Below are positions 1 through 13,231 of a stretch of DNA of 13,231 bases, piece after piece (position 1 is the first letter of the stretch; each line of letters begins with the position of its first letter). Location: the NCBI GenBank assembly GCA_000388065.2, contig KB932209.1. One strand, given 5' to 3'. Made by a program: the position numbers and the translations under genes. The notes under the pieces were generated by a model. That model was not told the origin of the DNA. It did no database searches and saw only the letters and a program-made list of their open reading frames with translations. Source of the DNA: Fonticula alba ATCC 38817. Lineage: Eukaryota; Protista; Nucleariida.

Positions 1-1552
1 CTCTCGGGGTCGCCTTGGTACGATGCTTCGGCCGCGAGCGCCGGTCGGTGGATGCTCCGGTTGACTGACACTGCCCCTCCCTGCCCTGTGCCCTGCCCTC
101 CTCCCGGTCCCTGCCGCTTGTAGCTCTGGGTCTCGGCATCGGTCTCGGCCTGTTGTTCGTCCTGTTGTTGCTGGCGGTCGTGGTGTTGCTGTTCCTTCGG
201 CACCGGCGGGCGCCGGCGGCGAAGAAGTCCCCTGGCGAGGAGGATGCCCATGCGACGGTGCTCAACACAATTGTCGAGTTGTCACTGCCCGGCAGCATCA
301 TTGTCAATATCATGGCCGATTTCTCGCCCCTCGGCGAGGAGAACCTCGGCGCCGGGACCCAGGCGTCCGTCTATGCCGCACGTGCCGTCGGGGCCGGGAT
401 CTCCGATCGCCTCAAGTGTCCGCACACCGTCGCCATCAAGCGCCTCAAGGGTGCGCCTTCCTGCCTCGGTCGCATGGTGGCCAGCTGCCCTGGTGGCCCC
501 TCTTCCCTCGCATTTGCCCCCGCGGGGCCCCCCCCCCCCCCCCCCTGCCGGTGTTTAACCATTGTCCCTTTTTGCGTGCGATTCAGCCGACACCTTGCGG
601 CCCAGCCAGGCGCCGCTCTTCCAAAATGAGGTTGCCCTCATGTGGTACGTCACCATGCGAGGCCCGGGGCGGGATGGCTTGAATCACCGCGTGCCGGCTC
701 TCACACTGGACCTTCTGCACGCGCGCCAGGATGCTGCGCGATGCGCCGAACGTGGTGCAGCTGTACGGCTACTCCGAGACGCCACCGGCCATTGTCATGG
801 AGCGCTTCCAGGCCAGCCTGGACACGCTGCTCCATTCGGATGTGGCTCTGTCGCCGGTGCAGCTTCTGGACATTGTCCAGCAATGGGCCACCGGGCTTGA
901 GGCCATGCACGCGCATGGGGTGGCCCATTGCGACCTGAAGCCCGGCAATGTTTTCGTAGCCCTCCGGGCGGATGGCGGTTGGGCTGCCTCGCTCGGGGAC
1001 CTGGGCACCTCGCGGAACCTGAGCACCGACCGGTCCTCGGCCCTTGTCAACCAGCCGCCCGAGCTGAGTGCGCTGACAGCGCGATACGCGGCGCCCGAGG
1101 TGCTGGCCGCCTTCCAGCGCCGGCGCCCGCTGGACACCGAGCTCTACCTTCCGGCGGACATCTACTCGGCGGCGGTGCTGCTGTGGGAGTGCCTCCACCG
1201 CCGGGTCCCGTGGCAGGGTGCGTGCTGGGATGGTGTTTTCTTTTTTCTTCGGTCTCCCCCCGTCGACCGCTCGTCGTCCCCGAGCCAGGGCCTAACTTTT
1301 CCGCTTCCTCCCCATGTCCCCCCCCCCCCCCCCCCCCCCCGGGGCCTGCGTGCAGGCCAAGGCTTCGAGGAGATTGCGGCACAGGTCCTGGCCGGCGACC
1401 GGCCAGACGCCGGTGGCTCGGTCCCCCTCGCCGCTGACCCTCTGGCCGACATGCTGCCGCTTGCCTGGGACTCCAACCCCCATTCCCGGCCGATGGCTGC
1501 CTCTTTCCGTCTCAAGTGCTCGATGGCCTGGCTGGCTGCCGGGGGGGATTAG
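1..1552 (+). CDS. Receptor kinase A, 3' part (TM + juxtamembrane + TKL-like Ser/Thr kinase, non-RD), 5'-truncated by the window. Exons 1-17, 124-450, 587-644, 730-1217, 1356-1552
   Basis: The spliced frame is continuous (intron phases 1,1,2,1). It gives TM LGLGIGLGLLFVLLLLAVVVLLFL + RHRR (126-197), G-loop LGAGTQASVY, VAIK, NEVALM, HCDLKPGN, GDLG, YAAPE, DIYSAAVLLW, and C-lobe AWDSNPHSRP, with stop TAG at 1550-1552. It aligns without indels to gene B across both N-lobe splice junctions. Confidence 0.92.
18..123 (+). other. Intron (106 nt, phase 1) just before the TM exon of gene A
   Basis: GTACGA donor, CTGAC branch site at 65-69, pyrimidine tract, TAG acceptor. The same intron is at 11458-11563 in gene B. 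Confidence 0.9.
451..586 (+). other. Intron (136 nt, phase 1) in the gene A kinase N-lobe
   Basis: GTGCGC...TTCAG. Removal gives KRLKADTLRPSQAPLFQNE, matching gene B KQFKTHRLKPTQGPLFQNE. Contains C18 at 528-545. Confidence 0.9.
645..729 (+). other. Intron (85 nt, phase 2) in gene A
   Basis: GTACGT...CCAG. Removal gives ALMWMLRDAPNVV, matching gene B ALMWLLRDMPGVV. Confidence 0.9.
1218..1355 (+). other. Intron (138 nt, phase 1, no in-frame stop) in the gene A kinase C-lobe
   Basis: GTGCGT donor, CTAAC at 1292-1296, C23 at 1318-1340, GCAG acceptor. Removal gives VPWQGQGFEEIAAQV and deletes a low-complexity FFFL/poly-P stretch. Confidence 0.85.
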
Positions 1553-1749
1553 CCGGCCCCCGGCGCTGGCGGGCGTCCCTCTCACAGGTTGTTGTCGTCG
1601 CCGCCGTCCCGATGCGGTCGAACAAAGGAGACAAGAGGCACGGGGCGCTCCCAGCCCCATAGAATGTCTCTCCGTACTTGGCGCGAAGCATCGAATATAC
1701 ACATTCCCCCCCCCCTTTGGCAATCTCCCTCTCGCCCGCCCTCCGGGGG

Positions 1750-3520
1750 ATCGCTGGTTCCGATCCTGTTGCCCGAGGCCCGGTGCCGTGGCGGCCGGTG
1801 GCCAGGGCGCATGTGTGCCACGTGAAGGCCGGGGGGGGGATCTACGGGCAGTTTCACCGTGCTGCCAATGGATCGTGCTTTGGCTCCATCCCGGTGCGCC
1901 ACCGGATCCAGGGGGCCTCGCTTGGGCGCCGCCCCCGCGGGCGGGGTCCTCCGAGCGATCTCCCCGCGGCATGGCCGAGCATTTTCCACCACCGCCGGAG
2001 GGGCGCCTCACCGGCGCCATTGTTTCGGGTCCCTGCCCCGAGTTCCGGCTTGGCGGCCTGCGCGTGCGGCCTCGACCGAGTGTCGGGCTGTCGCCTCCAC
2101 GCCTCCACGGCATGCCTGCCTCGGGGCCGATTTCCCGGGAGGCGGGATTCCTGGCTATTTGTCGAGAATGGCCGGCGCAGCCTGGGTTTGTTCGACGGTT
2201 CTTGCGGATGGCTCCCCTCGGGAACGACCCACGGTGCCCTGCTTGCTGGGCCTGTGTCCTGCATTTCGGCCATCCGTGGGACGATTGGGCTTGCGCCAGG
2301 AAAGGGGCGGGGGGAGTGCGGAAGATCTCCCATCGGCCGGGGCCGCTCAAGCAGCCTGACCTGGTGCACGCCGTGGACTGGGCCCCTTTCTGTCCCAGGG
2401 GCCAGCCCTTTTGAGGGCCAATGGTGCATGCCCTTCAAGGGAGGTTCCTTCTGTCCCCGCCAGGTCGGCAGCATTCCCGGGCAGATGGTCCGGCTGGATG
2501 CCGCTCGGGCGGGGCTCCCACAGCCGGGTGGGCATTTCCCCCTGGTGCCTCGGTGCCAGGCAGCTCGCGCCGCCGGCATCCACCCGACCGATGGTCGTTC
2601 CTCTCTTCCGGCGGCTGGCCTGCTGTCGGGGCCATGCCCTGGTCCGGCTGTTTCCCCGAAGACGAGGCAGGCACCCTGCGCCGGGGTGGCAGCAAAGGTG
2701 CCCGGGCGCCGAGCCCGCGAATGCCCAGTGGCCGAGAGCGCGTCCGCTGGGCCAGTGCCCACCCGGCACGCCCGGCCGACTGCCATGCGGCTCGTGTGCG
2801 CCCCCGTGAAGGGGGGACTTCCGAGCTGGATGGGCAGCTTCCGATGGTGGTCCCTGGTGGAGGCGCGGCAGCCAGGCGCCTGGCCGCCATGCTGCCGGAC
2901 AAGCGCGACAATGGGGCGGCCCGCCGCGCCTCGCCGGTGACAAGGCTCCAGCCGACATGTCGATGCGGGGTCGCGTTCCCCTCGGCCACCCGGCGGGTCT
3001 CGGTCAGCGTCGGCCTCTTGCGATGTCGGCCACCGACTGTGCATTCGAGGGAAGGACCACTCGGGGAAGGTGCCAGGAAAATGCACGTGGCTGATCGGCC
3101 GCCCGTGGGCTTGGCAGGCTTCGGGCAATTTGGCCCAGCCCTCAGCTGTGGCCTTCGTCGCCGCATGGCCAGCCCCGGGCACCGGTGACATCTCCTTCGG
3201 ATCGATGGCGCCTCGTGTCTGGGCGCCATCGATGGACCGCGTGCGAGTCGTCATTTTCATTGGCTGGCTCAGGACCGGTGGCCGGGTCTTCTGCCCGAAG
3301 CATGCCGGCTGGTCTCTCGGCCAGGGGGTCAGACAGATTGCATGGGCAGCCCGAACCTCGCCCCGGGTCTTTGGGCACGAGCCCGGCCTTCTCCCCCGCA
3401 CCGGGCCTGTCTGGACATCCATCGTGGCGGACCAGCTTGCGGGTGTCGGTCCCGGCGACCCCATGCCGGCCTGCCCCCCTGCCCCGATTCCCTCCCTGCT
3501 GGACTGCGGCACGGACCACT
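1750..3520 (+). pseudogene. Probable decayed ectodomain of a family paralog
   Basis: Three short motifs are collinear with gene B exon 1 but lie in three different frames: EFRLG (2040-2054 vs 5997-6011), GADFPGG (2123-2143 vs GADFPAG 6060-6080), and WAPSMDRVRVVIFIG (3220-3264 vs FAPSGTLIRVRSVLFPTG 6759-6812). Boundaries are approximate. Confidence 0.45.
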
Positions 3521-4189
3521 GTCGGCACGGGGCGCATGCCGTGGGCCGGGAATCGACGTGGCGCCAGCCGGCCCCCCCGGCATCTGGCGCACGTCCAGCC
3601 GGGGCACCGGCGCCAATGTCGGCCTGTCGGGCGCCGGGGGGTGGACTCCTCCTTGGCTGCCGGTGGGCACGGCTGCCCAGTCCCGCTCGGGTGCACCGTC
3701 GCGAGTGGCGGTCGCGCTTTTTTCTTTTCGCCCCGCTCGTTCGCCAAGTGTGCGCCTCGATGCCGCGGGACATGGTGCGACGCGGACATGCGCCCGGGAG
3801 ATGTCGCGGCAAAGTCGCTGACGCGCTTGGGCTGTGGTGTTCCCGCGGAATGGGCGCGCCGGGCAGAATGGCTCCTGGACAGCCAGGGCGCCAGCTCCCC
3901 CTCCCCTCCGGCTCCCGCGGCATTCCGACGCTCCCTTGACCGGCCGCATGTCCTGGGGCCGAGATTCCCTTCCGGGTCTCGGCGGCAGGCCATCGTGTCG
4001 GGGGATGGGCGTCGCTCTGGCGTCTGTGATGGAGGGGCCGAGCGGGCTCTTCCCCCCCCCCCGGGCCGCCGCCCTTCGCGAGACCTTGGTTGTTCGAGCA
4101 CCGAGCCCCATGCCCTGGCGATGGGCCTCATTCAGGCCCCGGCAGTGCGGCGCATCCCACTCGGGCCTGCGCCATGGGTGGGGCCGTCG

Positions 4190-4342
4190 ATGCGCCTTCA
4201 CGCAGGGGGCGGGCTGCTCGTTGGCTTGTTGTCCCTGGCTGTGCTCCTGGTCCATGGCCCATGTGTGTCGCACTGGTGGTCCGGCAGGCATGCGCCGGGG
4301 CCCGGACGCGGGACCCCAGCCCCCGAAGCCGGGCCGAGATAA
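4190..4342 (+). pseudogene. Short ORF with a signal-peptide/TM-like start (MRLHAGGGLLVGLLSLAVLLVHG), possibly a paralog remnant
   Basis: ATG 4190, a hydrophobic stretch, then stop TAA at 4340-4342. Faint Cys-repeat-like fragments follow (e.g. SGVCLS..W.AGTW near 4420-4470). Confidence 0.25.
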
Positions 4343-5096
4343 TGGTCAAGCTCGCGTGCGACAGGCGAGGCTGACGACTCGGGCCCTGCGCGGCAGGGCC
4401 ACCGCCAGTCGCAAGCATCTGGCGTCTGCCTGTCGGAGATCCTTGCCTGGCAGGCCGGCACCTGGCCGGGCGGGCGCATTCCCCGTCGAAGGCAGGCGGC
4501 CTGCCAGCGCTCTGCGGCACGAGAAGACCGGGCGCTCCGAGTGGTCCCAGCTGCTCGGTTGGGGTGTCCGAGCTTGGCTGGCGGCTCCCGGACGCGCCAT
4601 ACCCGGTGCGGTATCTCCGGCCGCCGGTGCCGGTCCCTTCCCGGCCGATGCCTCCCGGCAGGCCGCTCGCCCTGCCAGGCCGGCAGTGCTGCGGCCCCAG
4701 GTGGCTGAGCAGCGCCGCGAACGGGCGCCCGTCATTCCCGGCAATGGTCAACGCACCGGCGGACTGATGCTCTCACGGCAGGCCTAGTCATGGGACACAG
4801 TAGCATGCAACGCCTCCAAGGGGGCGGACCATCCGGACCCCTGCTCCCCGCGCCAGTACCGCAGAGACCCCGGGCCGCCGCCCCGCCGGGGGGGGGGGGG
4901 GGGCAGCGACATGCGCGTCGAGGGGGACATATGGCCTGCGGGCTGGCCGCTTGAAGTTGCACTGTCTCCTTCGGTCCCGGCATCTGCGTGTGCCCGGCTG
5001 GCGGTGGTTCCCGGGGATCCAGGCAGGGGGCAGGACGCGTGTTTGCTCTGCTGCTTGGGCATCGGCGTCGAGACATATGGCCCCTATGGGTGGCTG

Positions 5097-5274
5097 TTCG
5101 CCGCGCAGGTGCTGGCCGGGGGGGGGCGGCCCAGCGCGGCCGGCCGTGGGGGGCTCGGGCCCGAGTCGCGCTTTGAGGACCTGCTGCAGCTGGCCTGGGA
5201 CTCGAACACGTGCGCCCGGCCACGCTGGGCCGCCCCGCAAGAACAACATGGCTGGTATTACTGCCAGAGGTGAC
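5097..5274 (+). pseudogene. Frameshifted remnant of a kinase C-terminus (third paralog)
   Basis: FAAQVLAGGGRP...FEDLLQLAWDSNTCARP matches gene A IAAQVLAGDRP...LADMLPLAWDSNPHSRP. Then 16 nt replace 21 nt, and similarity resumes in another frame: KNNMAGITARGD (5239-5274) vs KCSMAWLAAGGD*. No upstream kinase subdomains were found. Confidence 0.8.
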
Positions 5275-5756
5275 ATGCAAATTCGCTCTGGGCGATTGTC
5301 AAATTAGCACGCGTCGCACGCGTCTCCTCCCATCGCGGCCCCCTGCAACTCCCAATGCATGCAGACGCCAGCCAATCTCGCTCATTTCGGCGTGGACGGT
5401 CTCGACCCATCCCCGGAAACCCTCGTCGTTTACGCCGCCAGCCTGCTCTTCGCGCTCATTCCCGAGTCACCAGGAGCACCAGGAGCTTTTCCATCCCCCC
5501 GGCCCCCCCCCCCCCCTTTCGAATGCCCGGAGGATTACACGCAGGGGGCATGCATCACTCCGGGCCTTTGGTGGCTGTCCGGAGCCAAAGCGGCCAGTTC
5601 CAGGGGGAAAAAGCAACAACGAAAAACCAACCCCCTTGGAGCCCGCCGCCCACCAGGCCGTTGGTCAGACACTCCCCCCCCCCTCCCCTTGTGTTCTTTT
5701 TCCCTCCCCCTTTCCCCCGTGTCCCTGTCCTCGACTAGCTCGCTCCCCGGGCTGCC

Positions 5757-8700
5757 ATGGTGGGCCAACAGCCGGTGCTGATGCACCTGATCCGCCTCCT
5801 GGCCCTTGTCATCATCGCTGCGACTACCTCGCACGCGCAAGACGTGGCCTACTGCCAAGCGCCGCATTCGCTCATGGGTGACGCTCAGGGCATTCTTCTC
5901 CAAGCAACCGGCTCACTTCCGACGGGTGCCGTGCTCTTTGGCCAGTCCAAGGTGGAGATCTTCCAGCAGGATTACATCTCCTTCGGCGCGGCTGGGGAAT
6001 TTCGCCTCGGGCTTGCCTTCAATCCGAACCAGGCGAGCCAGGCCTTTTACCCCCCCGGGGGAGCGGATTTCCCCGCCGGTTGGGAACGACACATCCTGTC
6101 AAGTCCGGGCGATTCCCCCTTGCTGCTGGCAGTTGGACCGGCAGAGGCTCGTCTCTTCTCCTCCACAGGCAACTCTCCGCTGAGTTTCCCCAGCCAAGCC
6201 TTGGGAAGGCTGCTTGCGACATCATCTCCGCGCCCGAACCAAGCCATCCTCCTTACTCTCCTGCCAAACTCTTTTTTCCTTCTCGTGCACATGTTCGCTA
6301 ATAGCAGCCACCACAAAGAAATCTCCCCCATGCTCCCCGGTGGCGTGCTTCCGGGAAGTGCCATGCGCGCTGCGCGTGCTGCCGATCCTTGCGTGTTTTA
6401 TATCTGGCAGCACAAGAACCTGCTGCGTCTCACCTACTCGTATGATGACAATTCCGTGGATGTAGACCGATCTCTACTGAATGCGGTGATCCTTGATCTT
6501 GTGCCAACCAGACTCTCATCAGACACCGGGCCCGACAGCGAGGACCTGCTCCTTCTGATGGAGGGGGGTCATTGGCATGTGCTGCGGGATGGCCAGCTGC
6601 CTGTAAATGGGGCCCTGGGCGAGGGGATGCCGCAGCCGGACTTTGCTCCCGGACAAATCCTGGCCCCCTTCAGTCATGAACTGGTTGATGGGGCCCGCAC
6701 CTCGATCGCCTTCTACCGGGACGACGGCATCGCCGGGCCAAAATTCTGGCGCTTGGAGTTTGCCCCCAGTGGCACACTGATCCGCGTGCGGTCGGTACTT
6801 TTCCCGACCGGCGCCACCGACCTGGAGGCCCTCAGGCCGATGTTCCTTCGAATCGATGACTCGGACGCTGTGCGGCTCGTATTGGCCAACTCCCGGGCAT
6901 ACTTCGACCCGGTGGACTTTGGCTGCGGCGATCCGGCCAACACCCTCCCTGGGGATGAGTCAATTACTTGCCTTTCAAGCAGCAGCTCCGGCTGGACATG
7001 CAATACCGGCAGGGTCCCCGGCATCTTTGGCAAGGGCGAGCGTCTGTGCAATGCCTGCCGGGACGGCTTTGGGGCTTTCCTCAATCCGAATGGGGGTACG
7101 GCTGGTGGCTATCTTCTTTTGCCAGCCTTCCGTGTGTGTGTGTGTGTGTGTGTGTGAACGCGAGCGGAAACGTATGCCGGGGAGGAGGCGCGGGGTCAGG
7201 AAAACATGACAAAAGCCCCCCCCTCCCCAACAATAGGGACACACACTATGTCGCTAACCTCAAGCGCCCCATCGGAAACTCTCCTCGCGCCCGGATGCTC
7301 CTCCCTCCCCTTCTCTGTGTGCCCCTTGAATAGCTGTCGCATGCACAGCCTGCTCGACACCTAATTGTGCCACATGCGACTCCAGCACTGGCGAGTGCCT
7401 GGTTTGCCTGACTGGGTATCTGGTTGTCATCTCGGATCAAACATTCTGTCTGGAAAGCTGCCCGACCGGCCTCCAGCCCGTGGGCAATGTATGCCAAGAT
7501 GCCAGCATCGGCACTCGCATCCAATCGGATGTGAGCTTCACCCAGGCAACGGTCAGCGGTACCGCCTGGAACCCGGCCGGACAGGACCCGGTGGATGTGC
7601 TCCTTCCGACGGTGCTTCTAGTGCAGGCGGGAGCCGTGTACCTGCCCTGGAGCCAGGACGTCCGGCCCCCGCGTTTGCTTGGCCTCCGGTCCAGCGGCCT
7701 GCCCCTACTGATCACCCCCATGAGCACGGTCGCCGAGGAAAACCTCCAGTCGGTTGATGCCATTGCCCCGGGGAATTGGCCGTCGATGGGCCAGTCCAGC
7801 CTCCGGGGCGCCATCGAAATCCTCCAACCAAGCTCCGAGTCGGGATACCACGACGCCGTGGTTGTCTATTGCAGCAGCGCGGGCCTGTCCTTCGTCTGGC
7901 TGAAATGTCTATCGGTCCCCGTGGGCCCTGTGGGCACGCCCTGCAAGGCTGACTTGTCTCTGTCGTCACAGAACGAGAGACCATGTGACGCGATTGCGGC
8001 TTTTGCGGATGGCCGAACGATTGCCGTGACCGACAGCACGGGGACCCGGCTTTTTCGGTTCTCCTCAGGCGGGAGCTTTTCCCAGGTGCCCCTCTTCGGG
8101 GGGCCCGGCTTGCCGGTCCTCCTGCCGGGTCCCTCGTCGGCTGGGGATGCCCAGCTCATGGTTCTCAGCGATTCCCACGGGAATCTAACGGTGTCGCCGC
8201 TGGCCATGCATTTGGCAAATGACCTGCGCTTGTCTTCGGTGCGGATGAATGTGTTCGCCAGGAACAAGCCGGCGGGCCTTCGGCCCTTGGTCCTGCCGAC
8301 TCCCAGCCGAGCCGGCCAATCCACGGGCGACTTCCTGGCCAGCTGTCTGGAAGCCGACCCCAATGGAATGGGCACCCTCTGGACGGTGTCTCATCTGCCC
8401 GGGGGGTGGGCTCCTCGCGGTCAGACTGCCGGATTGCCCAGTCGATCGCACACCCTGCTGGCGCTGGCAGATACCCCGGACGATTACCGCATCGAGGCCG
8501 TTCCTCTGGAGGGCATGCCCCTGACTCCGGGGATGCTTGTGCTGATGGTGGACAGATTCTTCGCCATGGCCATCCTCCACTGTGAGCCGGACCGGGCCAA
8601 TTGCTTCTTCCTGCCTGCTCGGAAAGTCACCCTGCCGGAGGAACTCCTGTTGACCGCCGCTGCCATGTTTGTTGCCGTGCCTTCGCCATCCTCGGGAATA

Positions 8701-11700
8701 ACGCCCCCCATGGGTGTCGCCGGCCAGGCCACCTCCCTGGGGCCCTCCATCTTGACGGCCTCCTTCATGGTGCTGCTGAAGGACAATGTCCTTCCCTTCC
8801 GAGTGGATGTCACGGTGGCCCTGTGCCCTGGCGCTGGCCCGGGGATTTATCTCCCCGACTGCCTGCCCTGCCATGATACCTGCCACACTTGCTTCGGGTC
8901 CCTGCCAAGCCAGTGCATCGAGTGCCATCTCGCGGCCCCGGGACACTTGCCGGGCGTGTGCCTGGCCAGCTGCCCAGCCGGCCTCCACCAGGTCCCCAAC
9001 ACTCGGACATGCGACTGCCACCAGGACTGCGACCAATGCGAGGCTGATACCAGCCTCAACCGGTTCTACTGCACCGACTGTGCGGTCGGGCTGGCCCTGG
9101 ATGTGTCTGATCCCCTGGCCGATCGTTGCCTCCCGTGTCACGACAGCTGCCGGGCATGTCGCTTTCCCGATGATGAGGCCGCCTGCGATGGCTGTGCCCT
9201 GGGCTTCTTCGAGCATGGTGGGCTTTGTCTTGCGGCCTGTCCACCGGGCACTTGGGCCAATGGGGTTGACCGAAAGTGCTCGGCCTGTCCAGATGGCTGC
9301 ACCGCCTGCACCGGGACCGACGCCTGCAGTGCCTGCTCGGCTGGATGGTACCACGACCCGGACGCCAGCAAGTGCCATGCGTGTCCGATGACTTGCGATG
9401 AGTGCACCTCCCCTGGGGTTTGCAGCCTCTGCCGCCCGGGGCTGGTTTTCCTGTCGCCCAATCCCTCGGTCGGGTCCCTCTGTGGCAGCACCTGTGCCCC
9501 GGGCGAGTATGTCGGGCCCGGCCGGTGCATGGCCTGCGACGGGTCGTGTGCCCTGTGCACTGGCGGGCCGGCGGTGTGCTCGGTGTGCGCGCCGGGCCAC
9601 CGGTGGGCCGGGCCGGCCCCGGCCCCGGGCNNNNNNNNNNNNNNNNNNNNNNNNNNNNNNNNNNNNNNNNNNNNNNNNNNNNNNNNNNNNNNNNNNNNNN
9701 NNNNNNNNNNNNNNNNNNNNNNNNNNNNNNNNNNNNNNNNNNNNNNNNNNNNNNNNNNNNNNNNNNNNNNNNNNNNNNNNNNNNNNNNNNNNNNNNNNNN
9801 NNNNNNNNNNNNNNNNNNNNNNNNNNNNNNNNNNNNNNNNNNNNNNNNNNNNNNNNNNNNNNNNNNNNNNNNNNNNNNNNNNNNNNNNNNNNNNNNNNNN
9901 NNNNNNNNNNNNNNNNNNNNNNNNNNNNNNNNNNNNNNNNNNNNNNNNNNNNNNNNNNNNNNNNNNNNNNNNNNNNNNNNNNNNNNNNNNNNNNNNNNNN
10001 NNNNNNNNNNNNNNNNNNNNNNNNNNNNNNNNNNNNNNNNNNNNNNNNNNNNNNNNNNNNNNNNNNNNNNNNNNNNNNNNNNNNNNNNNNNNNNNNNNNN
10101 NNNNNNNNNNNNNNNNNNNNNNNNNNNNNNNNNNNNNNNNNNNNNNNNNNNNNNNNNNNNNNNNNNNNNNNNNNNNNNNNNNNNNNNNNNNNNNNNNNNN
10201 NNNNNNNNNNNNNNNNNNNNNNNNNCACTTCGACGGCCGGGTGCTCGCCCTGTGGGGCCCACTGCAGCAGCTGCCCCGGGCAGGCGGACACGTGTGCCCT
10301 GTGCGAGCGGGGGTGGCTGCTGGCCTCGCCGGCGTGCGTGGACTCCTGCCCGGCCGGGTCCTCGCCGCAGGGCGGCTTGTGCGTCACCTGCCACCCGACC
10401 TGTGACACCTGCTACGGCCCGGGGGCCGACCAGTGCACCTCCTGTGGATCCAACCATCCGTTGCTTGTGGATGGGCGCTGCTTGGCCGACTGCCCTGCGG
10501 GCAGCTTCTCCTCGGGGCACAAGTGCATCCCCTGCCATGCCTCCTGCGAAGCCTGCAGTGGCCCCGGCCCCGAAGAGTGTGCCAGCTGCCCTGACGGGCG
10601 CGTCCTCTTGGGCAGCGCCTGCTTGCTTGCCTGCCCTGCGAAGCATTATGTGGCAGACGCGCATCCTGCCGGCTCGGTATGCCGGCCTTGCGATGCATCT
10701 TGCGCAGCGTGCGACGGCCCGGCCGAAGGCCAGTGTACTGGCTGCCCGGCGGGCGCATGGCTGGAATCCGGGCGCTGTGTGGATTCGTGCTCGGCGCGGT
10801 TCTTCCTCTGCCCGGGGACCAGCTCGTGCGAGGCCTGCCCGGCCGGCTGCTCGTCCTGTGCGGCTGCCGATGCAGGTTGCATGCCGGTGTGCACGGGCTG
10901 CGAAGGGGCGCTGGTCCTGTCGCCGGTGACCGGGCTCTGTGCGGAGGCCTGTGCAGAGGGCGAGTTCCTGCCGAGCGGCCAGACCCATTGCCTTGCCTGC
11001 CATGCCTCTTGTCGGACCTGCATCGACGCCGGGACATTCTGCACCTCGTGCCCCGGGAACTCGCTGTGGCTCCAGAAGGAGACCGGCATTTGCGCGTCGG
11101 CCTGCCCGGGGACCGGCTTCGTGGAGGCGGTCTTCCCCGGGGCCACGCCGGACCGGGTGTGCCTGGCCTGCCCGGACACGTGCGAGGCGTGCACGACCGA
11201 GGGCATGGCCGGGGCATGCAAGCTCGGGCCGAGCGGGCGAGTCGAGTGCCCGGTACCCGAGACCTGCACCCGGTGCGCGTTGGAGCTGCTGCTCCACGGC
11301 GGGTCGTGCGTGCCCGCCTGCCCGAGCACCGGGTTCTTTGCCGACTGGGAGGCCTCTCCGGCGGAGTGTGCTGCCTGCCATGACAAGTGCCGTGTTTGCT
11401 CCGGGCCATCGAGGGCCGACTGCCTGGACGGGCCGGGATCCTCTCGGGGTCGCCTTGGTACGATGCTTCGGCCGCGAGCGCCGGTCGGTGGATGCTCCGG
11501 TTGACTGACACTGCCCCTCCCTGCCCTGTGCCCTGTCCTCCTCCCGGTCCCTGCCGCTTGCAGCTCTGGGACTTGGCCTCGGCCTGGGTCTGCTCCTGCT
11601 GCTGCTCCTTCTTGTTGTCTTGTTTTTCCTACGCCGGCGTCTGGGCGCCGCCTCAAAGCGTCTTCCTGTGCGTTGTACCCCCCGGGAAGGGAGAGCGGGG

Positions 11701-12678
11701 GGGTCCCACCTTTTGCCGGCCAACCGGTCGCTGACACTCCATCTCGCTCACTCACCACAGCCAACGGATGATGGCCTCGATGAAAGTACGTCTCGGCTGC
11801 TTGGCTCGCTGGGGCTTCTTCGCCCCCTTTCTCCCCTCCGCCTCACGGCATGGCCCGATCTTTGGACTGACCGCCTTTCCGGAAAGACGCGACTGTCATG
11901 AACACCATCCTCGGTGCGTTTCTCCGGCCCAAGCGCTTGTGCACCCCTCGTTGGCCCGGCTGACCCGTCGCCCCTCGGTCCATCACACAGAGCTCTCCCT
12001 GCCCGGCAGTATCATGGTCAACATCGGCAGCGATTTTGCCCGCCTCAATGAGGCCAGCCTGGGGGCTGGGGCCCAGGCCAGCGTCTTTGGCGCGCGCGCC
12101 GTCGGGGCCGGCATCTCCGACCGCCTCGGCTGCCCGGGCACCGTGGCCATCAAGCAATTCAAGACCCACCGGCTGAAGCCCACTCAGGGGCCCCTCTTCC
12201 AGAATGAAATTGCCCTGATGTGGCTGCTGCGCGACATGCCCGGCGTGGTCCGGCTCTATGGGTATAGTGAGCAGCCGCCGGCCATTGTCATGGAGCGCTT
12301 TGACACGGATCTCCACAATCTCCTCCATTCGGAGGTGCCCCTGCCACCGGCCATCCTTTGCGCCATTGTCGAGCAGTGGACCGCGGGCCTCGAGGCCATG
12401 CATGCCCAGGGCATCGCCCACCGGGACATCAAATCCGGCAATGTCTTTGTGAGTCGCAATGCCGATGGCAGCTGGCGGGCCGCTCTCGGGGACTTGGGCG
12501 CCTCGCGGAGCCTGAGCACCGACCGGTCCTCGGCCCTTGTGGTCGACGTGCCCGAGCTCAATGCCATGACAGCGCGATATGCCGCGCCCGAGGTGCTGGC
12601 CGCCTTCCAGCGCCGGCGCCCGCTGGACACCGAGCTCTACCTTCCGGCGGACATCTACTCGGCGGCGGTGCTGCTGTG
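5757..12678 (+). CDS. Receptor kinase B: signal peptide, non-Cys module, short Cys linker, second non-Cys module, furin-like repeats, TM, TKL-like Ser/Thr kinase (RD). Exons 5757-7095, 7334-9630/[gap]/10226-11457, 11564-11667, 11761-11785, 11887-11913, 11991->12678
   Basis: Exon phases are consistent. Kinase motifs: LGAGAQASVF, VAIK, NEIALM, HRDIKSGN (12419-12442), GDLG, YAAPE, DIYSAAVLL, then the N gap. The kinase exon is missing from the ORF track, probably because its frame stays open to the window end. Joining across the 595-N gap is inferred. Confidence 0.8.
5781..5837 (+). other. Predicted signal peptide of gene B (MHLIRLLALVIIAATTSHA|QD)
   Basis: Basic n-region, hydrophobic h-region and S-x-A cleavage pattern. 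The start may be ATG 5757 or ATG 5781. Confidence 0.75.
7096..7333 (+). other. Intron (238 nt, phase 1) in the gene B ectodomain
   Basis: GTACGG donor, CTAAC at 7254-7258, pyrimidine tract, TAG acceptor. The join gives FLNPNG-AVACTACSTPNCATC, and both flanking frames hit stops inside the interval. Confidence 0.8.
7132..7156. repeat. (GT)12 microsatellite inside the intron
   Basis: Perfect GT repeat, 25 nt. Confidence 0.97.
8824..11423 (+). repeat. Furin-like (FU / growth-factor-receptor) Cys-rich repeat array, at least 14 units visible
   Basis: Recurrent CxxCxxxCxxC cores, e.g. CLPCHDTCHTCFGSLPSQCIEC, CVTCHPTCDTCYGPGADQCTSC, CIPCHASCEACSGPGPEECASC, CAACHDKCRVCSGPSRADC. Six lie before the gap and eight after. 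Confidence 0.92.
9631..10225. other. Assembly gap (595 N)
   Basis: Run of N inside the furin-repeat exon. The coding frame differs on the two sides, so the size is an estimate. Confidence 0.99.
11441..11570 (+). repeat. Near-identical copy of 1-130 (exon end + 106-nt intron 11458-11563 + TM exon start)
   Basis: 128/130 identical. Mismatches are at 96/11536 (C/T) and 121/11561 (TAG vs CAG acceptor). Confidence 0.97.
11566..11631 (+). other. Transmembrane helix of gene B
   Basis: LGLGLGLGLLLLLLLLVVLFFL followed by the RRR stop-transfer sequence. Confidence 0.92.
11668..11990 (+). other. Three introns (11668-11760, 11786-11886, 11914-11990) and two micro-exons (11761-11785, 25 nt; 11887-11913, 27 nt) in the gene B juxtamembrane region
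   Basis: Donors GTGCGT, GTACGT, GTGCGT. CTGAC branch sites at 11731, 11867, 11960. Acceptors CAG, AAG, CAG. The spliced product KRLP-PTDDGLDE-NATVMNTIL-ELSLPGSIMVN matches the uninterrupted gene A HATVLNTIVELSLPGSIIVN. Confidence 0.85.
12584..12678 (+). repeat. 95-nt block identical to 1091-1185 (APE to subdomain IX); also 12511-12540 = 1018-1047
   Basis: Direct comparison at constant offset 11493. No synonymous differences in either block. Confidence 0.95.
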
Positions 12679-12688
12679 NNNNNNNNNN
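12679..12688. other. Assembly gap (10 N, probably placeholder length)
   Basis: It truncates the gene B kinase inside a block identical to gene A. Confidence 0.97.
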
Positions 12689-13231
12689 CTGGAGATGATC
12701 CAGTCCGGCGACCAGCTTTACACCTGTGTATCTACCTGCGGGAGCCAGGAATACCGCGACCCGGTGTCGCTGGCCTGCCTGCCGTGCCACAGTGCCTGTG
12801 CCACGTGCAATGGGCCCACCGATCACGACTGCTGGCGGTGCGCCGACTCCGTCCTGCAAGATGGCCAGTGCCTGCAATCCTGCGCTCCCAAGCATGTGGC
12901 CACCTCGGGCCGGTGTCTCCCCTGCCATCCTTCGTGCGCCGGCTGCTTCGGCACCCGGAGTACGGAATGCCACGACTGCCTGGGTGGCTTGCTGACGCTG
13001 CCAGCTGGCGGCCCGGCTGCCCGGTGTGTGGCTTTCTGCCCGGTGGGCTACAGCACTTCGACGGCCGGGTGCTCGCCCTGTGGGGCCCACTGCAGCAGCT
13101 GCCCCGGGCAGGCGGACACGTGTGCCCTGTGCGAGCGGGGTGGCTGCTGGCCTCGCCGGCGTGCGTGGACTCCTGCCCGGCCGGGTCCTCGCCGCAGGGC
13201 GGCTTGTGCGTCACCTGCCACCCGACCTGTG
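12689..13231 (+). CDS. Furin-like repeat ectodomain fragment of another paralog, allele or misplaced contig; 1-nt frameshift at 13137-13140
   Basis: LEMIQSGDQLYTCVSTCGSQEYRDPVSLACLPCHSACATCNGPTDHDCWRC...CPVGYSTSTAGCSPCGAHC. 13054-13231 equals 10226-10404 except G4 versus G5 (10309-10313). Confidence 0.8.
   Translation, partial: MEMIQSGDQLYTCVSTCGSQEYRDPVSLACLPCHSACATCNGPTDHDCWRCADSVLQDGQCLQSCAPKHVATSGRCLPCHPSCAGCFGTRSTECHDCLGGLLTLPAGGPAARCVAFCPVGYSTSTAGCSPCGAHCSSCPGQADTCALCERGGCWPRRRAWTPARPGPRRRAACASPATRPV

What the first reader, a model, noticed from the sequence alone, without database searches (positions are those of the whole stretch)
1..13231. Tandem cluster of furin-repeat receptor Ser/Thr kinases with signs of a diversifying recognition system
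Seen: two same-strand receptor kinases, a third ectodomain fragment, decayed remnants between them, mosaic identity patches, and an RD/non-RD catalytic difference. Established: tandem arrays with birth-and-death turnover and sequence exchange are typical of plant RLK/NLR immune loci and self-recognition loci. Inference: this may be a prey/pathogen-sensing or kin-recognition receptor family of a protist. If the host is the aggregating amoeba Fonticula (recalled, unverified), kin discrimination during fruiting is a natural candidate function.
Basis: partly seen in the sequence, partly recalled or inferred. Interest (0 to 1): 0.75.

Follow-up and report, generated by a model that had tools for sequence, protein, structure and literature searches.

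The report
Two Fonticula receptor kinases, mis-assembled
This stretch of the slime-mould-like amoeba Fonticula alba holds two neighbouring genes from a large, species-only family of surface receptor kinases; the supposed third gene piece is most likely a misplaced assembly fragment, and nothing here yet shows a role in recognition.

Summary
The host is Fonticula alba: every related protein found carries that name. The window is C9:64115-77345, bounded by N runs on both sides.

Real features:
- Gene A: transmembrane segment plus kinase at 1-1552, catalytic loop HCD (non-RD).
- Gene B: 5757-12678, catalytic loop HRD.
- One relic of a kinase last exon at 5097-5246.
- Tracts where A and B are exactly identical.

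Not a third gene: fragment 12689-13231 matches what is missing from gene B's 595-N gap. Its 3' end equals 10226-10404 except for one G in a homopolymer. Gene B's kinase continues at C9 80521, beyond the window.

Contig ends overlap the paralogue by exactly 95 nt. I read this as the K-1 overlap of a K=96 graph assembler, so the gaps mark exact repeats shared by A and B. One shared tract covers an intron, which points to gene conversion.

Across the family, the outer head domains are never more than 45% identical, while kinases reach 94%. Synonymous divergence is 4-6 times lower in the kinase than in the head. dN/dS is about 1 or less everywhere. Non-RD is the majority state (28 of 43).

Kin or prey recognition remains untested. 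The scan has flagged this family on other DNA of this genome.

The parts
1..16 (+). Gene A: end of its last stalk exon. The window opens inside the gene, just after a 2310-N gap.
   Evidence: 1-95 is identical to gene B 11441-11535. The exon end was placed by homology to the annotated donor at 11456/11457.
124..450 (+). Gene A exon: transmembrane helix, juxtamembrane region and start of the kinase N-lobe (through the VAIK lysine).
   Evidence: Translation and splice-site reading. 74% aa identity to gene B kinase residues 1-58.
606..644 (+). Gene A short exon encoding the kinase alpha-C region. Gene B has no intron on either side of this stretch.
   Evidence: Frame and GT/AG reading. The split match 1-58 / 79-229 appears.
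731..1217 (+). Gene A kinase core exon. Catalytic loop HCD at 926-934 (non-RD); DLG and APE motifs present.
   Evidence: Pkinase E=7e-22, motif, pattern hit at C9:65040.
1356..1552 (+). Gene A last exon and stop codon.
   Evidence: Translation. 59% aa identity to gene B's last exon at C9 80961-81158.
5097..5246 (+). Relic of a kinase last exon, about 510 nt upstream of gene B's start codon. It is the only family remnant found between the two genes.
   Evidence: tblastn gives 72% aa identity; blastn gives 90.5% over 137 nt to C9 80983-81113.
5757..7094 (+). Gene B exon 1: signal peptide and head domain 1, predicted all-beta and propeller-like at low confidence.
   Evidence: Annotated model P0001 mapped to the window. 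AlphaFold2 pLDDT 57; best Foldseek matches are generic beta-propellers. No Pfam match.
7348..8829 (+). Gene B exon 2, first part: one Cys-rich unit followed by head domain 2, a predicted beta-propeller.
   Evidence: AlphaFold2 pLDDT 67, pTM 0.67; best matches are the DDB1 BPB, WD40 and LGI1 EPTP propellers. About 65 full-length relatives, and all those checked are F. alba.
8830..9630 (+). Gene B stalk, about 6 furin-like CxxC units. The last 193 nt (9438-9630) are identical to gene A at C9 60915-61107, and the contig ends there.
   Evidence: Pfam VSP and Furin-like_2, identity profile, exact tract.
9631..10225 (.). Assembly gap of 595 N inside gene B's stalk.
   Evidence: Gene A crosses the same interval in 602 nt.
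10226..11456 (+). Stalk, about 8 furin-like units in one open frame. 10226-11535 probably represents a segment shared by genes A and B that the assembler collapsed and placed once.
   Evidence: GF_recep_IV at 48 bits, above its cutoff. There are 95-nt exact overlaps with gene A's contig ends at both ends of the segment.
11457..11562 (+). Intron of gene B. Its first 79 nt lie inside the exact A=B tract.
   Evidence: Annotated donor and acceptor, tract 11441-11535.
11563..11667 (+). Gene B transmembrane exon.
11990..12678 (+). Gene B kinase, from the N-lobe to subdomain IX, without introns. HRD at 12419-12427. Cut off by the 10-N gap; the last 95 nt equal gene A 1091-1185.
   Evidence: Pkinase E=1e-23. 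The continuation is at C9 80521.
12689..13231 (+). Small contig of three stalk units. Positions 12689-13053 are 83% identical to gene A's C9 61336-61709. Positions 13054-13231 equal 10226-10404 except for G4 in place of G5. The contig ends exactly 95 nt after that difference.

Best explanation
The window holds the 3' third of one receptor-kinase gene (A) and most of a second (B). Both belong to a family of roughly 70-100 single-pass surface receptors found only in Fonticula alba. Each receptor has a signal peptide, two predicted beta-propeller heads, a stalk of about 17 furin-like CxxC units, one transmembrane helix and a TKL-type Ser/Thr kinase.

The 'third fragment' is not a gene. It is the contig that carries gene B's own version of the stalk piece missing from the 595-N gap, and the scaffolder put it in the wrong place. 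Gene B's kinase resumes after the window.

The gaps exist because A and B share exact tracts of 193 nt, probably about 1310 nt, and 136 nt. A K=96 graph assembler could not thread these. I infer that the tracts come from gene conversion between the neighbouring paralogues.

Across the family, conversion keeps the stalk, transmembrane and kinase part similar, while the heads have diverged until no two are more than 45% identical.

Inferred working: a head binds an extracellular ligand, the rigid stalk passes binding or clustering across the membrane, and the kinase signals. The ligands are unknown.
For: Host and family:
- All 47 relatives in the length class searched are F. alba 'TKL protein kinase' or 'serine/threonine protein kinase'.
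- About 67-75 kinase loci show at least 57% identity in the catalytic segment.
- The head-2 profile finds about 65 full-length matches among 1.84 billion proteins, and all those checked are F. alba.

Domains.

The fragment fills the gap:
- Its 5' 365 nt align to exactly the part of gene A that corresponds to gene B's gap.
- 228 + 365 = 593 nt, against 595 N.
- Its 3' 178 nt equal 10226-10404 with no mismatches and one homopolymer indel.

Kinase continuation: 267/267 identical, followed by the rest of the C-lobe, an intron and the last exon.

Graph signature: three contig ends overlap the paralogue by exactly 95 nt, and the fragment ends exactly 95 nt after the G4/G5 site.

Conversion:
- Identity jumps from about 55% to 100%.
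- Tract 11441-11535 covers 79 nt of intron.
- For A against B, dS is 0 in the tracts, about 0.6 in the kinase and in the fragment's stalk segment, and about 1.5-1.7 in head 2 and stalk part 1.
- C10 gene pairs show kinase dS of 0.15-0.2 against head dS of 0.74-1.13 in the same pair.
- In the kinase core, A and B are not sisters.

Gradient along the protein: nearest-neighbour identity is 76% for the kinase, 57% for the stalk and 40% for the head. No head pair exceeds 45%. Gene B's heads have no paralogue above 32%.
Against: - The scaffold puts the fragment 10 N after the kinase and puts 3175 N before the kinase continuation. Neither distance fits a single gene B whose contigs overlap.
- The continuation contig starts at a point (equivalent to 12412) that I cannot explain as a branch between A and B. 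This hints at another near-identical sequence.
- K=96 is inferred from the 95-nt overlaps. I did not read it from an assembly record.
- NG86 dS is unreliable at GC3 of about 0.8 and near saturation.
- Near-identical whole-gene copies would be collapsed or lost in gaps. Half of the C10 region I fetched reads N, so 'no two heads alike' may be partly an assembly effect.
- There is no expression, ligand or polymorphism data.
Confidence: 0.65

Rival explanations
1. There really is a further, nearly identical copy: either a gene C or a partial tandem duplication of the stalk-to-kinase segment of gene B. The fragment and the kinase piece after the window would belong to that copy. Its remaining sequence would be collapsed onto gene B's contigs or lost in the 3175-N gap.
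For: - The scaffold order is kinase, then 10 N, then the fragment, then 3175 N, then the kinase C-part.
- The fragment differs from 10226-10404 by one base in a way that survived assembly.
- The continuation contig begins 172 nt before the A=B tract, as if a variant lay just upstream.
- The family does duplicate in tandem.
Against: - A full repeat unit would need more than 7.5 kb, but the scaffold allows about 3.7 kb.
- Only one B-like version of the gap region exists in the assembly.
- Both overlaps are exact, apart from one homopolymer base.
- The fragment fits the 595-N gap to within 2 nt.
Confidence: 0.2
2. The exact A=B tracts are assembly artefacts, for example contig ends extended or patched with reads from the paralogue. 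In that case they are not biological gene-conversion tracts.
For: Every exact tract touches a contig end or a gap. The clusters of this family are the worst-assembled part of the sequence I fetched.
Against: - Overlaps of exactly 95 nt are what shared k-mers in the reads would produce, not what patching would produce.
- The 136-nt tract lies inside two uninterrupted contigs: gene A 1091-1226 and C9 80693-80828.
- C10 gene pairs that have no gaps show the same gradient in synonymous divergence.
Confidence: 0.08
3. One reading: the array is a self/non-self or prey/pathogen recognition repertoire kept diverse by positive selection on the heads. It might be used for kin discrimination when Fonticula aggregates to fruit.
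For: - The heads are all different (45% identity or less), while the signalling part is conserved.
- Head dN/dS is about 0.9, against 0.53 for the kinase.
- Most members are non-RD with Cys or Gly. Those are the same substitutions that mark plant pattern-recognition receptor kinases (PMC3411088).
- The family sits in clusters that show turnover.
- The family is absent from all other organisms searched.
Against: - No dN/dS clearly exceeds 1, and those values are inflated by codon bias and saturation.
- Part of the contrast between head and kinase comes from homogenisation of the 3' half, not from fast heads. The synonymous divergence differs too.
- There is no polymorphism, expression or binding data.
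- The only documented kin-recognition system of a social amoeba, Dictyostelium TgrB1/C1, is built differently (from my own knowledge).
Confidence: 0.15

Closest known systems
Entamoeba histolytica transmembrane kinases (EhTMKs; about 90 genes in families A-F)
   Same: Both are large amoebal families of single-pass receptors. Both have a signal peptide, a unique N-terminal region, a CXXC-rich repeat region resembling Giardia VSPs, and a cytosolic tyrosine-kinase-like (TKL-type) domain. Both families include many truncated or pseudogene copies, and ligands are mostly unknown (PMC2880585). The stalk here also matches Pfam VSP.
   Different: No sequence relative from outside Fonticula appeared in any search, so common descent is not shown. 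The Fonticula receptors are twice as long, carry two predicted propeller heads, and are mostly non-RD. Fonticula is an opisthokont, not an amoebozoan.
Plant receptor-like kinases of the non-RD class (XA21, FLS2, EFR)
   Same: Both have a variable ectodomain, one transmembrane helix and a Ser/Thr kinase in which Cys or Gly replaces the Arg before the catalytic Asp (PMC3411088). Both occur in tandem arrays that show duplication, decay and sequence exchange.
   Different: The ectodomain here is propellers plus a furin-like stalk, not LRRs. The closest solved kinases are B-Raf, not IRAK/Pelle. No link to microbe sensing has been tested. The RD and non-RD states interconvert repeatedly within one family.
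Animal EGFR / insulin-receptor type receptors (furin-like, GF_recep_IV domains)
   Same: A cysteine-rich furin-like module sits next to the membrane; the GF_recep_IV match is above its cutoff. Both are single-pass receptors with a cytoplasmic kinase.
   Different: The kinase here has the Ser/Thr-type loop (H-R/C-D-x-K-x-x-N). Fonticula is reported to have no tyrosine kinases (PMC4342544). The stalk has about 17 units rather than 1-2 domains, and the heads are unrelated.
Dictyostelium TgrB1/TgrC1 kin-recognition pair (from my own knowledge, not tested here)
   Same: Both are surface proteins of an aggregating amoeba that vary between copies or strains, and they are the natural comparison for a kin-recognition idea.
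   Different: The Tgr proteins have IPT/Ig-like folds and no kinase domain. They act as a matched ligand-receptor pair, and what defines them is polymorphism between strains. None of this is shown here.

Membership tests
Eukaryotic protein kinase superfamily (Pfam PF00069) | Match above the Pfam gathering score, with the catalytic Lys, the HxD...N loop, a DFG-like motif and the APE motif. | tested here: met
   78.5 and 84.5 bits against a cutoff of 31.7. VAIK, H(C/R)D-x-K-x-G-N, DLG and AAPE are present in both genes.
Non-RD kinases | The residue before the catalytic Asp is not Arg (typically Cys or Gly). | tested here: met
   Met for gene A (HCD, 926-934). Not met for gene B (HRD, 12419-12427). 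Family-wide: 25 C, 3 G, 15 R.
Tyrosine kinases (group A receptor tyrosine kinases) | A catalytic loop of the HRDLAARN / HRDLRAAN type, and placement in the TK clade. | tested here: not met
   The loop is H-R/C-D-[IL]-K-x-G-N, the Ser/Thr type. A published survey found no TK in Fonticula (PMC4342544).
TKL group kinases | Phylogenetic placement within the TKL group. | tested here: inconclusive
   The best solved relatives are B-Raf, but only at E of about 1e-10. NCBI names the paralogues 'TKL protein kinase'. I built no group-level tree.
Furin-like / growth-factor-receptor cysteine-rich repeats | Pfam match above the cutoff and a regular CxxC spacing. | tested here: met
   GF_recep_IV 48.3 bits (cutoff 29.5) and VSP 37.5 bits (cutoff 31.4) on 10227-11501. 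Triplets of CxxC recur every 48-50 residues, and Cys makes up 16% of residues.
Entamoeba TMK family | Detectable homology of the kinase or ectodomain to EhTMKs. | not tested
   I made no direct comparison with an EhTMK sequence. No non-Fonticula protein appeared, but the length window and word filter limit that result.
Beta-propeller ectodomains | A confident model with 6-8 four-stranded blades closing into a ring. | tested here: inconclusive
   The models are all-beta, with pLDDT 57 and 67. Foldseek's top hits are propellers, but TM-scores are only 0.35-0.59. I did not count blades.
Recognition loci under diversifying selection | dN/dS above 1 at ligand-facing sites, and high polymorphism between isolates. 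| tested here: inconclusive
   Pairwise dN/dS: head about 0.9 (range 0.67-1.27), stalk 0.76, kinase 0.53. These values are saturated and affected by codon bias. Polymorphism cannot be tested here.

The most novel reading that the evidence does not exclude
Fonticula, an aggregating relative of fungi, independently built an innate-recognition-style repertoire. It would consist of about 70-100 receptors, each with a unique propeller head, on a common stalk-and-kinase chassis that gene conversion keeps uniform. Most would signal through non-RD (Cys/Gly) kinases, as plant pattern-recognition receptors do. The repertoire would be used to tell apart prey bacteria, or kin from non-kin.
Probability: 0.15. 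Interest if true: 0.8.

Novelty: new variant of a known kind. Interest (0 to 1): 0.4.

Why it matters
For this window the practical result is a correction.
- The public gene model (2095 aa) splices across gaps. It puts a piece of stalk in the middle of the kinase and repeats part of the kinase.
- The 'third gene' is an assembly fragment.
- Gene B may carry a frameshift.

For the family, two points may interest people who study receptor evolution and the origins of multicellularity.
- The contrast between variable heads and uniform kinases is at least partly due to conversion of the 3' half. Synonymous sites and an intron are homogenised too, so fast head evolution alone does not explain it.
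- Two thirds of the kinases are non-RD with Cys or Gly, a trait otherwise tied to immune receptors.

I found no paper that describes this family. Its function is open and could be tested by expression profiling, isolate resequencing and knock-outs.

Tried and rejected
- Pfam on both head domains and on six long ORFs of the intergenic stretch, both strands: no match.
- The 757-codon minus-strand ORF at 1857-4127 and its neighbours: rejected as genes. GC1, GC2 and GC3 are all about 0.70-0.73, against 0.65/0.48/0.80 in real exons. The stretch is unique in the genome.
- My first 'furin2' query was translated in the wrong frame. I corrected it to 10227-11501. The 100% DNA-level matches taken from it stand and were re-derived by blastn.
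- Word search with head 2 found only the window's own protein.
- I compared the flanks of other short N gaps to learn what a 10-N gap means in this assembly. The result was inconclusive: one 58-N gap has 54-nt identical flanks, and the others have none.
- I checked whether the start of scaffold C6, which is 88% identical to 12689-12867, could be gene B's missing piece. It shows no match to 9100-9630, so it is another paralogue.
- YN00 failed on the saturated segments, so I report NG86 values only.
The rest of the C10 cluster and the C5 cluster could not be read, and half of what I fetched from C10 is N.
- I did not submit a joined, spliced model of gene A or B to any search. Exons were searched separately by reference. 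The annotated model P0001 was used only through a restricted region.


Full report
**Where the window lies.** The window is G000:C9:64115-77345 on the plus strand, in a 31.3-Mb genome of 214 scaffolds. The window is the sequence between two long N runs: 2310 N upstream and 3175 N downstream. It also contains the two gaps named by the scan's program. To read it I fetched about 20 kb upstream of the window and 30 kb downstream.

**What is encoded.**
- Gene A starts upstream of the window. Its signal peptide and head 1 lie at about C9 57330-58700, and head 2 and the stalk at 58900-61804. It re-enters the window after the 2310-N gap.
- Inside the window, gene A has the end of a stalk exon (1-16), a transmembrane/juxtamembrane/N-lobe exon (124-450), a short alpha-C exon (606-644), the kinase core (731-1217) and the last exon (1356-1552).
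- Gene B starts at 5757 with a signal peptide. Exon 1 runs to 7094 and exon 2 from 7348 to the gap at 9630. The stalk resumes at 10226 in one open frame to 11456. After an intron comes the transmembrane exon (11563-11667), then short juxtamembrane exons, then an intron-less kinase (11990-12678).
- Pfam confirms the kinases and the furin-like / GF_recep_IV / VSP repeats. The repeats are CxxC triplets every 48-50 residues, with 16% Cys.
- Neither head matches any Pfam family. AlphaFold2 models built on small alignments of paralogues are all-beta (pLDDT 57 and 67). Their best structural matches are generic beta-propellers, including the extracellular LGI1 EPTP propeller. I take 'two propeller heads' as likely, not shown.

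**First gap (9631-10225).**
- Gene A crosses the homologous interval without a break.
- A is identical to B over B's last 193 nt before the gap (9438-9630 = C9 60915-61107). A is identical again over B's first 95 nt after it (10226-10320 = C9 61710-61804). Between these, A has 602 nt.
- A length of 602 nt, rather than the estimated 595, would put the two sides of B in one frame.

**The fragment 12689-13231.**
- Its first 365 nt align at 83% to gene A's 61336-61709, which is the 3' part of the interval missing in B.
- Its last 178 nt equal 10226-10404, with no mismatch and one missing G in a G5 run.
- 228 + 365 = 593 nt, which fills the 595-N gap almost exactly.
- So the 'third ectodomain fragment' is best read as gene B's own missing stalk piece.

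**Second gap (12679-12688).**
- The two sides are not continuous. The left side is kinase subdomain IX and the right side is a furin unit.
- The kinase continues at C9 80521, after the window. There 267 of 267 nt repeat 12412-12678, followed by the rest of the C-lobe, an intron and the last exon.
- The public gene model for B (P0001, 2095 aa) treats the gaps as introns. As a result it contains the kinase N-part, then a stalk piece, then a repeated kinase part. It also contains a wrong-frame stretch from 10645-10827.

**Why the assembly broke here.**
- Gene A's upstream contig ends with exactly 95 nt that equal 10226-10320.
- The window begins with exactly 95 nt that equal 11441-11535, with a mismatch at position 96.
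- The contig 10226-12678 ends with exactly 95 nt that equal gene A 1091-1185. The full tract there is 136 nt.
- The fragment ends exactly 95 nt after the G4/G5 difference.
- Repeated overlaps of 95 nt are what a de Bruijn graph with K=96 leaves at branch points. K=96 is my inference, since I did not see the assembly record.
- On this reading the contig ends are places where two genes share exact sequence. The segment 10226-11535 (1310 nt) is one collapsed path used by both A and B. It was placed once, in B, which left the 2310-N gap in A.
- Gene A's upstream contig carries G5, which is in frame. The contig with the B-specific flank carries G4.
- So either gene B has a -1 frameshift in its stalk, which would make it a recently disabled gene, or this is a homopolymer error. 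Only reads can decide.

**What does not fit.**
- The scaffold places the fragment after the kinase and estimates 3175 N before the kinase continuation.
- The continuation contig starts 172 nt before the A=B tract, for no reason I can see.
- A further near-identical copy therefore remains possible; I give it about 0.2.

**Are the shared tracts biological?**
- Identity between A and B jumps from about 55% to 100% at 9438.
- A run that long has a chance probability below 1e-40 at the flanking identity.
- One tract (11441-11535) covers 16 nt of exon and 79 nt of intron, so protein-level constraint cannot explain it.
- The 136-nt tract lies inside two uninterrupted contigs.
- Synonymous divergence between A and B falls into classes. 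It is 0 in the tracts, about 0.6-0.7 in the kinase and in the fragment's stalk segment, and about 1.5-1.7 in head 2 and the first stalk part.
- In the kinase core, A and B are not sisters. They sit in an unresolved group with genes from scaffold C10. Gene B's heads have no paralogue above 32% identity anywhere in the assembly.
- This mosaic history fits repeated gene conversion, or exchange of 3' modules, between family members.

**The family.**
- The catalytic segment finds about 67-75 loci at 57% identity or more, mostly in clusters on C10, C5, C9, C11, C8 and C3.
- Among 35 annotated full-length members, median pairwise identity is 66% for the kinase, 48% for the stalk and 31% for the head.
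- Nearest-neighbour identity is 76%, 57% and 40%. No two heads exceed 45%, although kinases reach 94%.
- For seven C10 genes whose coding DNA I could rebuild exactly, dS rises from kinase to stalk to head within the same gene pair. One example is 0.15, 0.66 and 0.86.
- Median dN/dS is 0.53 for the kinase, 0.76 for the stalk and 0.90 for the head.
- So part of the contrast between variable tip and uniform kinase comes from homogenisation of the 3' half.
- Head dN/dS near 1 fits either relaxed constraint or a mix of purifying and positive selection. With GC3 near 0.8 and near-saturation, these values cannot show positive selection.

**RD against non-RD.**
- This is ordinary for the family. A strict DNA pattern finds 26 HCD and 21 HRD sites in the genome.
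- Of 43 annotated kinases, 25 are HCD, 3 HGD and 15 HRD.
- On a kinase tree the HRD state needs at least 5 changes, 3 of them forced by well-supported branches. One well-supported sister pair differs in state.
- Cys and Gly are the substitutions typical of plant non-RD receptor kinases, which as a class sense microbial signatures (PMC3411088). That parallel holds at the level of sequence, but as a clue to function it is only an analogy.

**Between the genes.**
- Only one relic was found: 5097-5246, a piece of a kinase last exon. It is 90.5% identical in DNA to gene B's own last exon and lies about 510 nt upstream of B's start.
- The other 3.5 kb (1560-5090) is 70-73% G+C and unique in the genome. 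It has no codon periodicity and no similarity to the family. Its many long ORFs are what such base composition gives by chance.

**Comparison with what is known.**
- The nearest described analogue is the Entamoeba histolytica transmembrane-kinase family. It has about 90 genes with a signal peptide, a unique region, CXXC-rich repeats like Giardia VSPs and a TKL-like kinase, and many copies are truncated (PMC2880585).
- No protein from outside Fonticula appeared in the word search or in the profile search of 1.84 billion representatives. So I can claim similar design, not shared descent.
- A published survey found no tyrosine kinases in Fonticula (PMC4342544), and the catalytic loop here is of the Ser/Thr type.
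- I found no paper that describes this family. NCBI already annotates its members as TKL or serine/threonine protein kinases.
- The scan has flagged the same family on several other pieces of this genome.

**Verdict.**
- This window is an ordinary pair from a notable, lineage-specific family, seen through a broken assembly.
Exons were searched separately by reference.

Noticed in passing
window 5757-13231 and C9 80521-81161: The public gene model for gene B (2095 aa) splices across three assembly gaps. It has a stalk piece inserted in the kinase, a repeated kinase segment and a wrong-frame stretch from 10645-10827. It should not be used as a protein sequence.
   Followed up: yes
window 10305-10309 versus 13137-13140: The G5 run is in frame and is shared with gene A's contig. 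The contig that carries the B-specific flank has G4 instead. Gene B may therefore carry a -1 frameshift in its stalk, or this may be a homopolymer error.
   Followed up: partly
window 1560-5090: A 3.5-kb stretch of 70-73% G+C between the genes. Its G+C is higher than that of gene B's head-coding exons. It is unique in the genome and shows no coding periodicity. Its origin is unknown.
   Followed up: partly
window 451-605 and 645-730, versus 11990-12678: Gene A has two introns in the kinase N-lobe that gene B lacks. Genome-wide, kinase matches fall into split and unsplit types. So intron presence or absence varies within the family.
   Followed up: no
L010:6183-7499 (C10 301183-302499) and L021:1645-2961, minus strand: The head-2 regions of two C10 paralogues contain in-frame stop codons. 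They may be pseudogenes.
   Followed up: no
C10 255001-455000 (L006-L025): 98.7 kb of these 200 kb read N, including runs of 24-31 kb. The family's largest cluster is mostly unassembled or withheld, so copy numbers are lower bounds.
   Followed up: no
scaffold C6:1-179, minus strand: The very start of another scaffold is 88% identical to 12689-12867. It looks like a further paralogue cut off by a scaffold end. I could not fetch it.
   Followed up: partly
window about 7120-7160, about 530-550 and about 1320-1340: Simple repeats lie inside introns: a (GT)n run in gene B's intron 1, and long poly-C runs in two of gene A's introns.
   Followed up: no
C9 53273-53330 (L001): A 58-N gap in the upstream neighbour gene has 54 nt repeated exactly on both sides. 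This is probably an overlap that the assembler did not merge.
   Followed up: no
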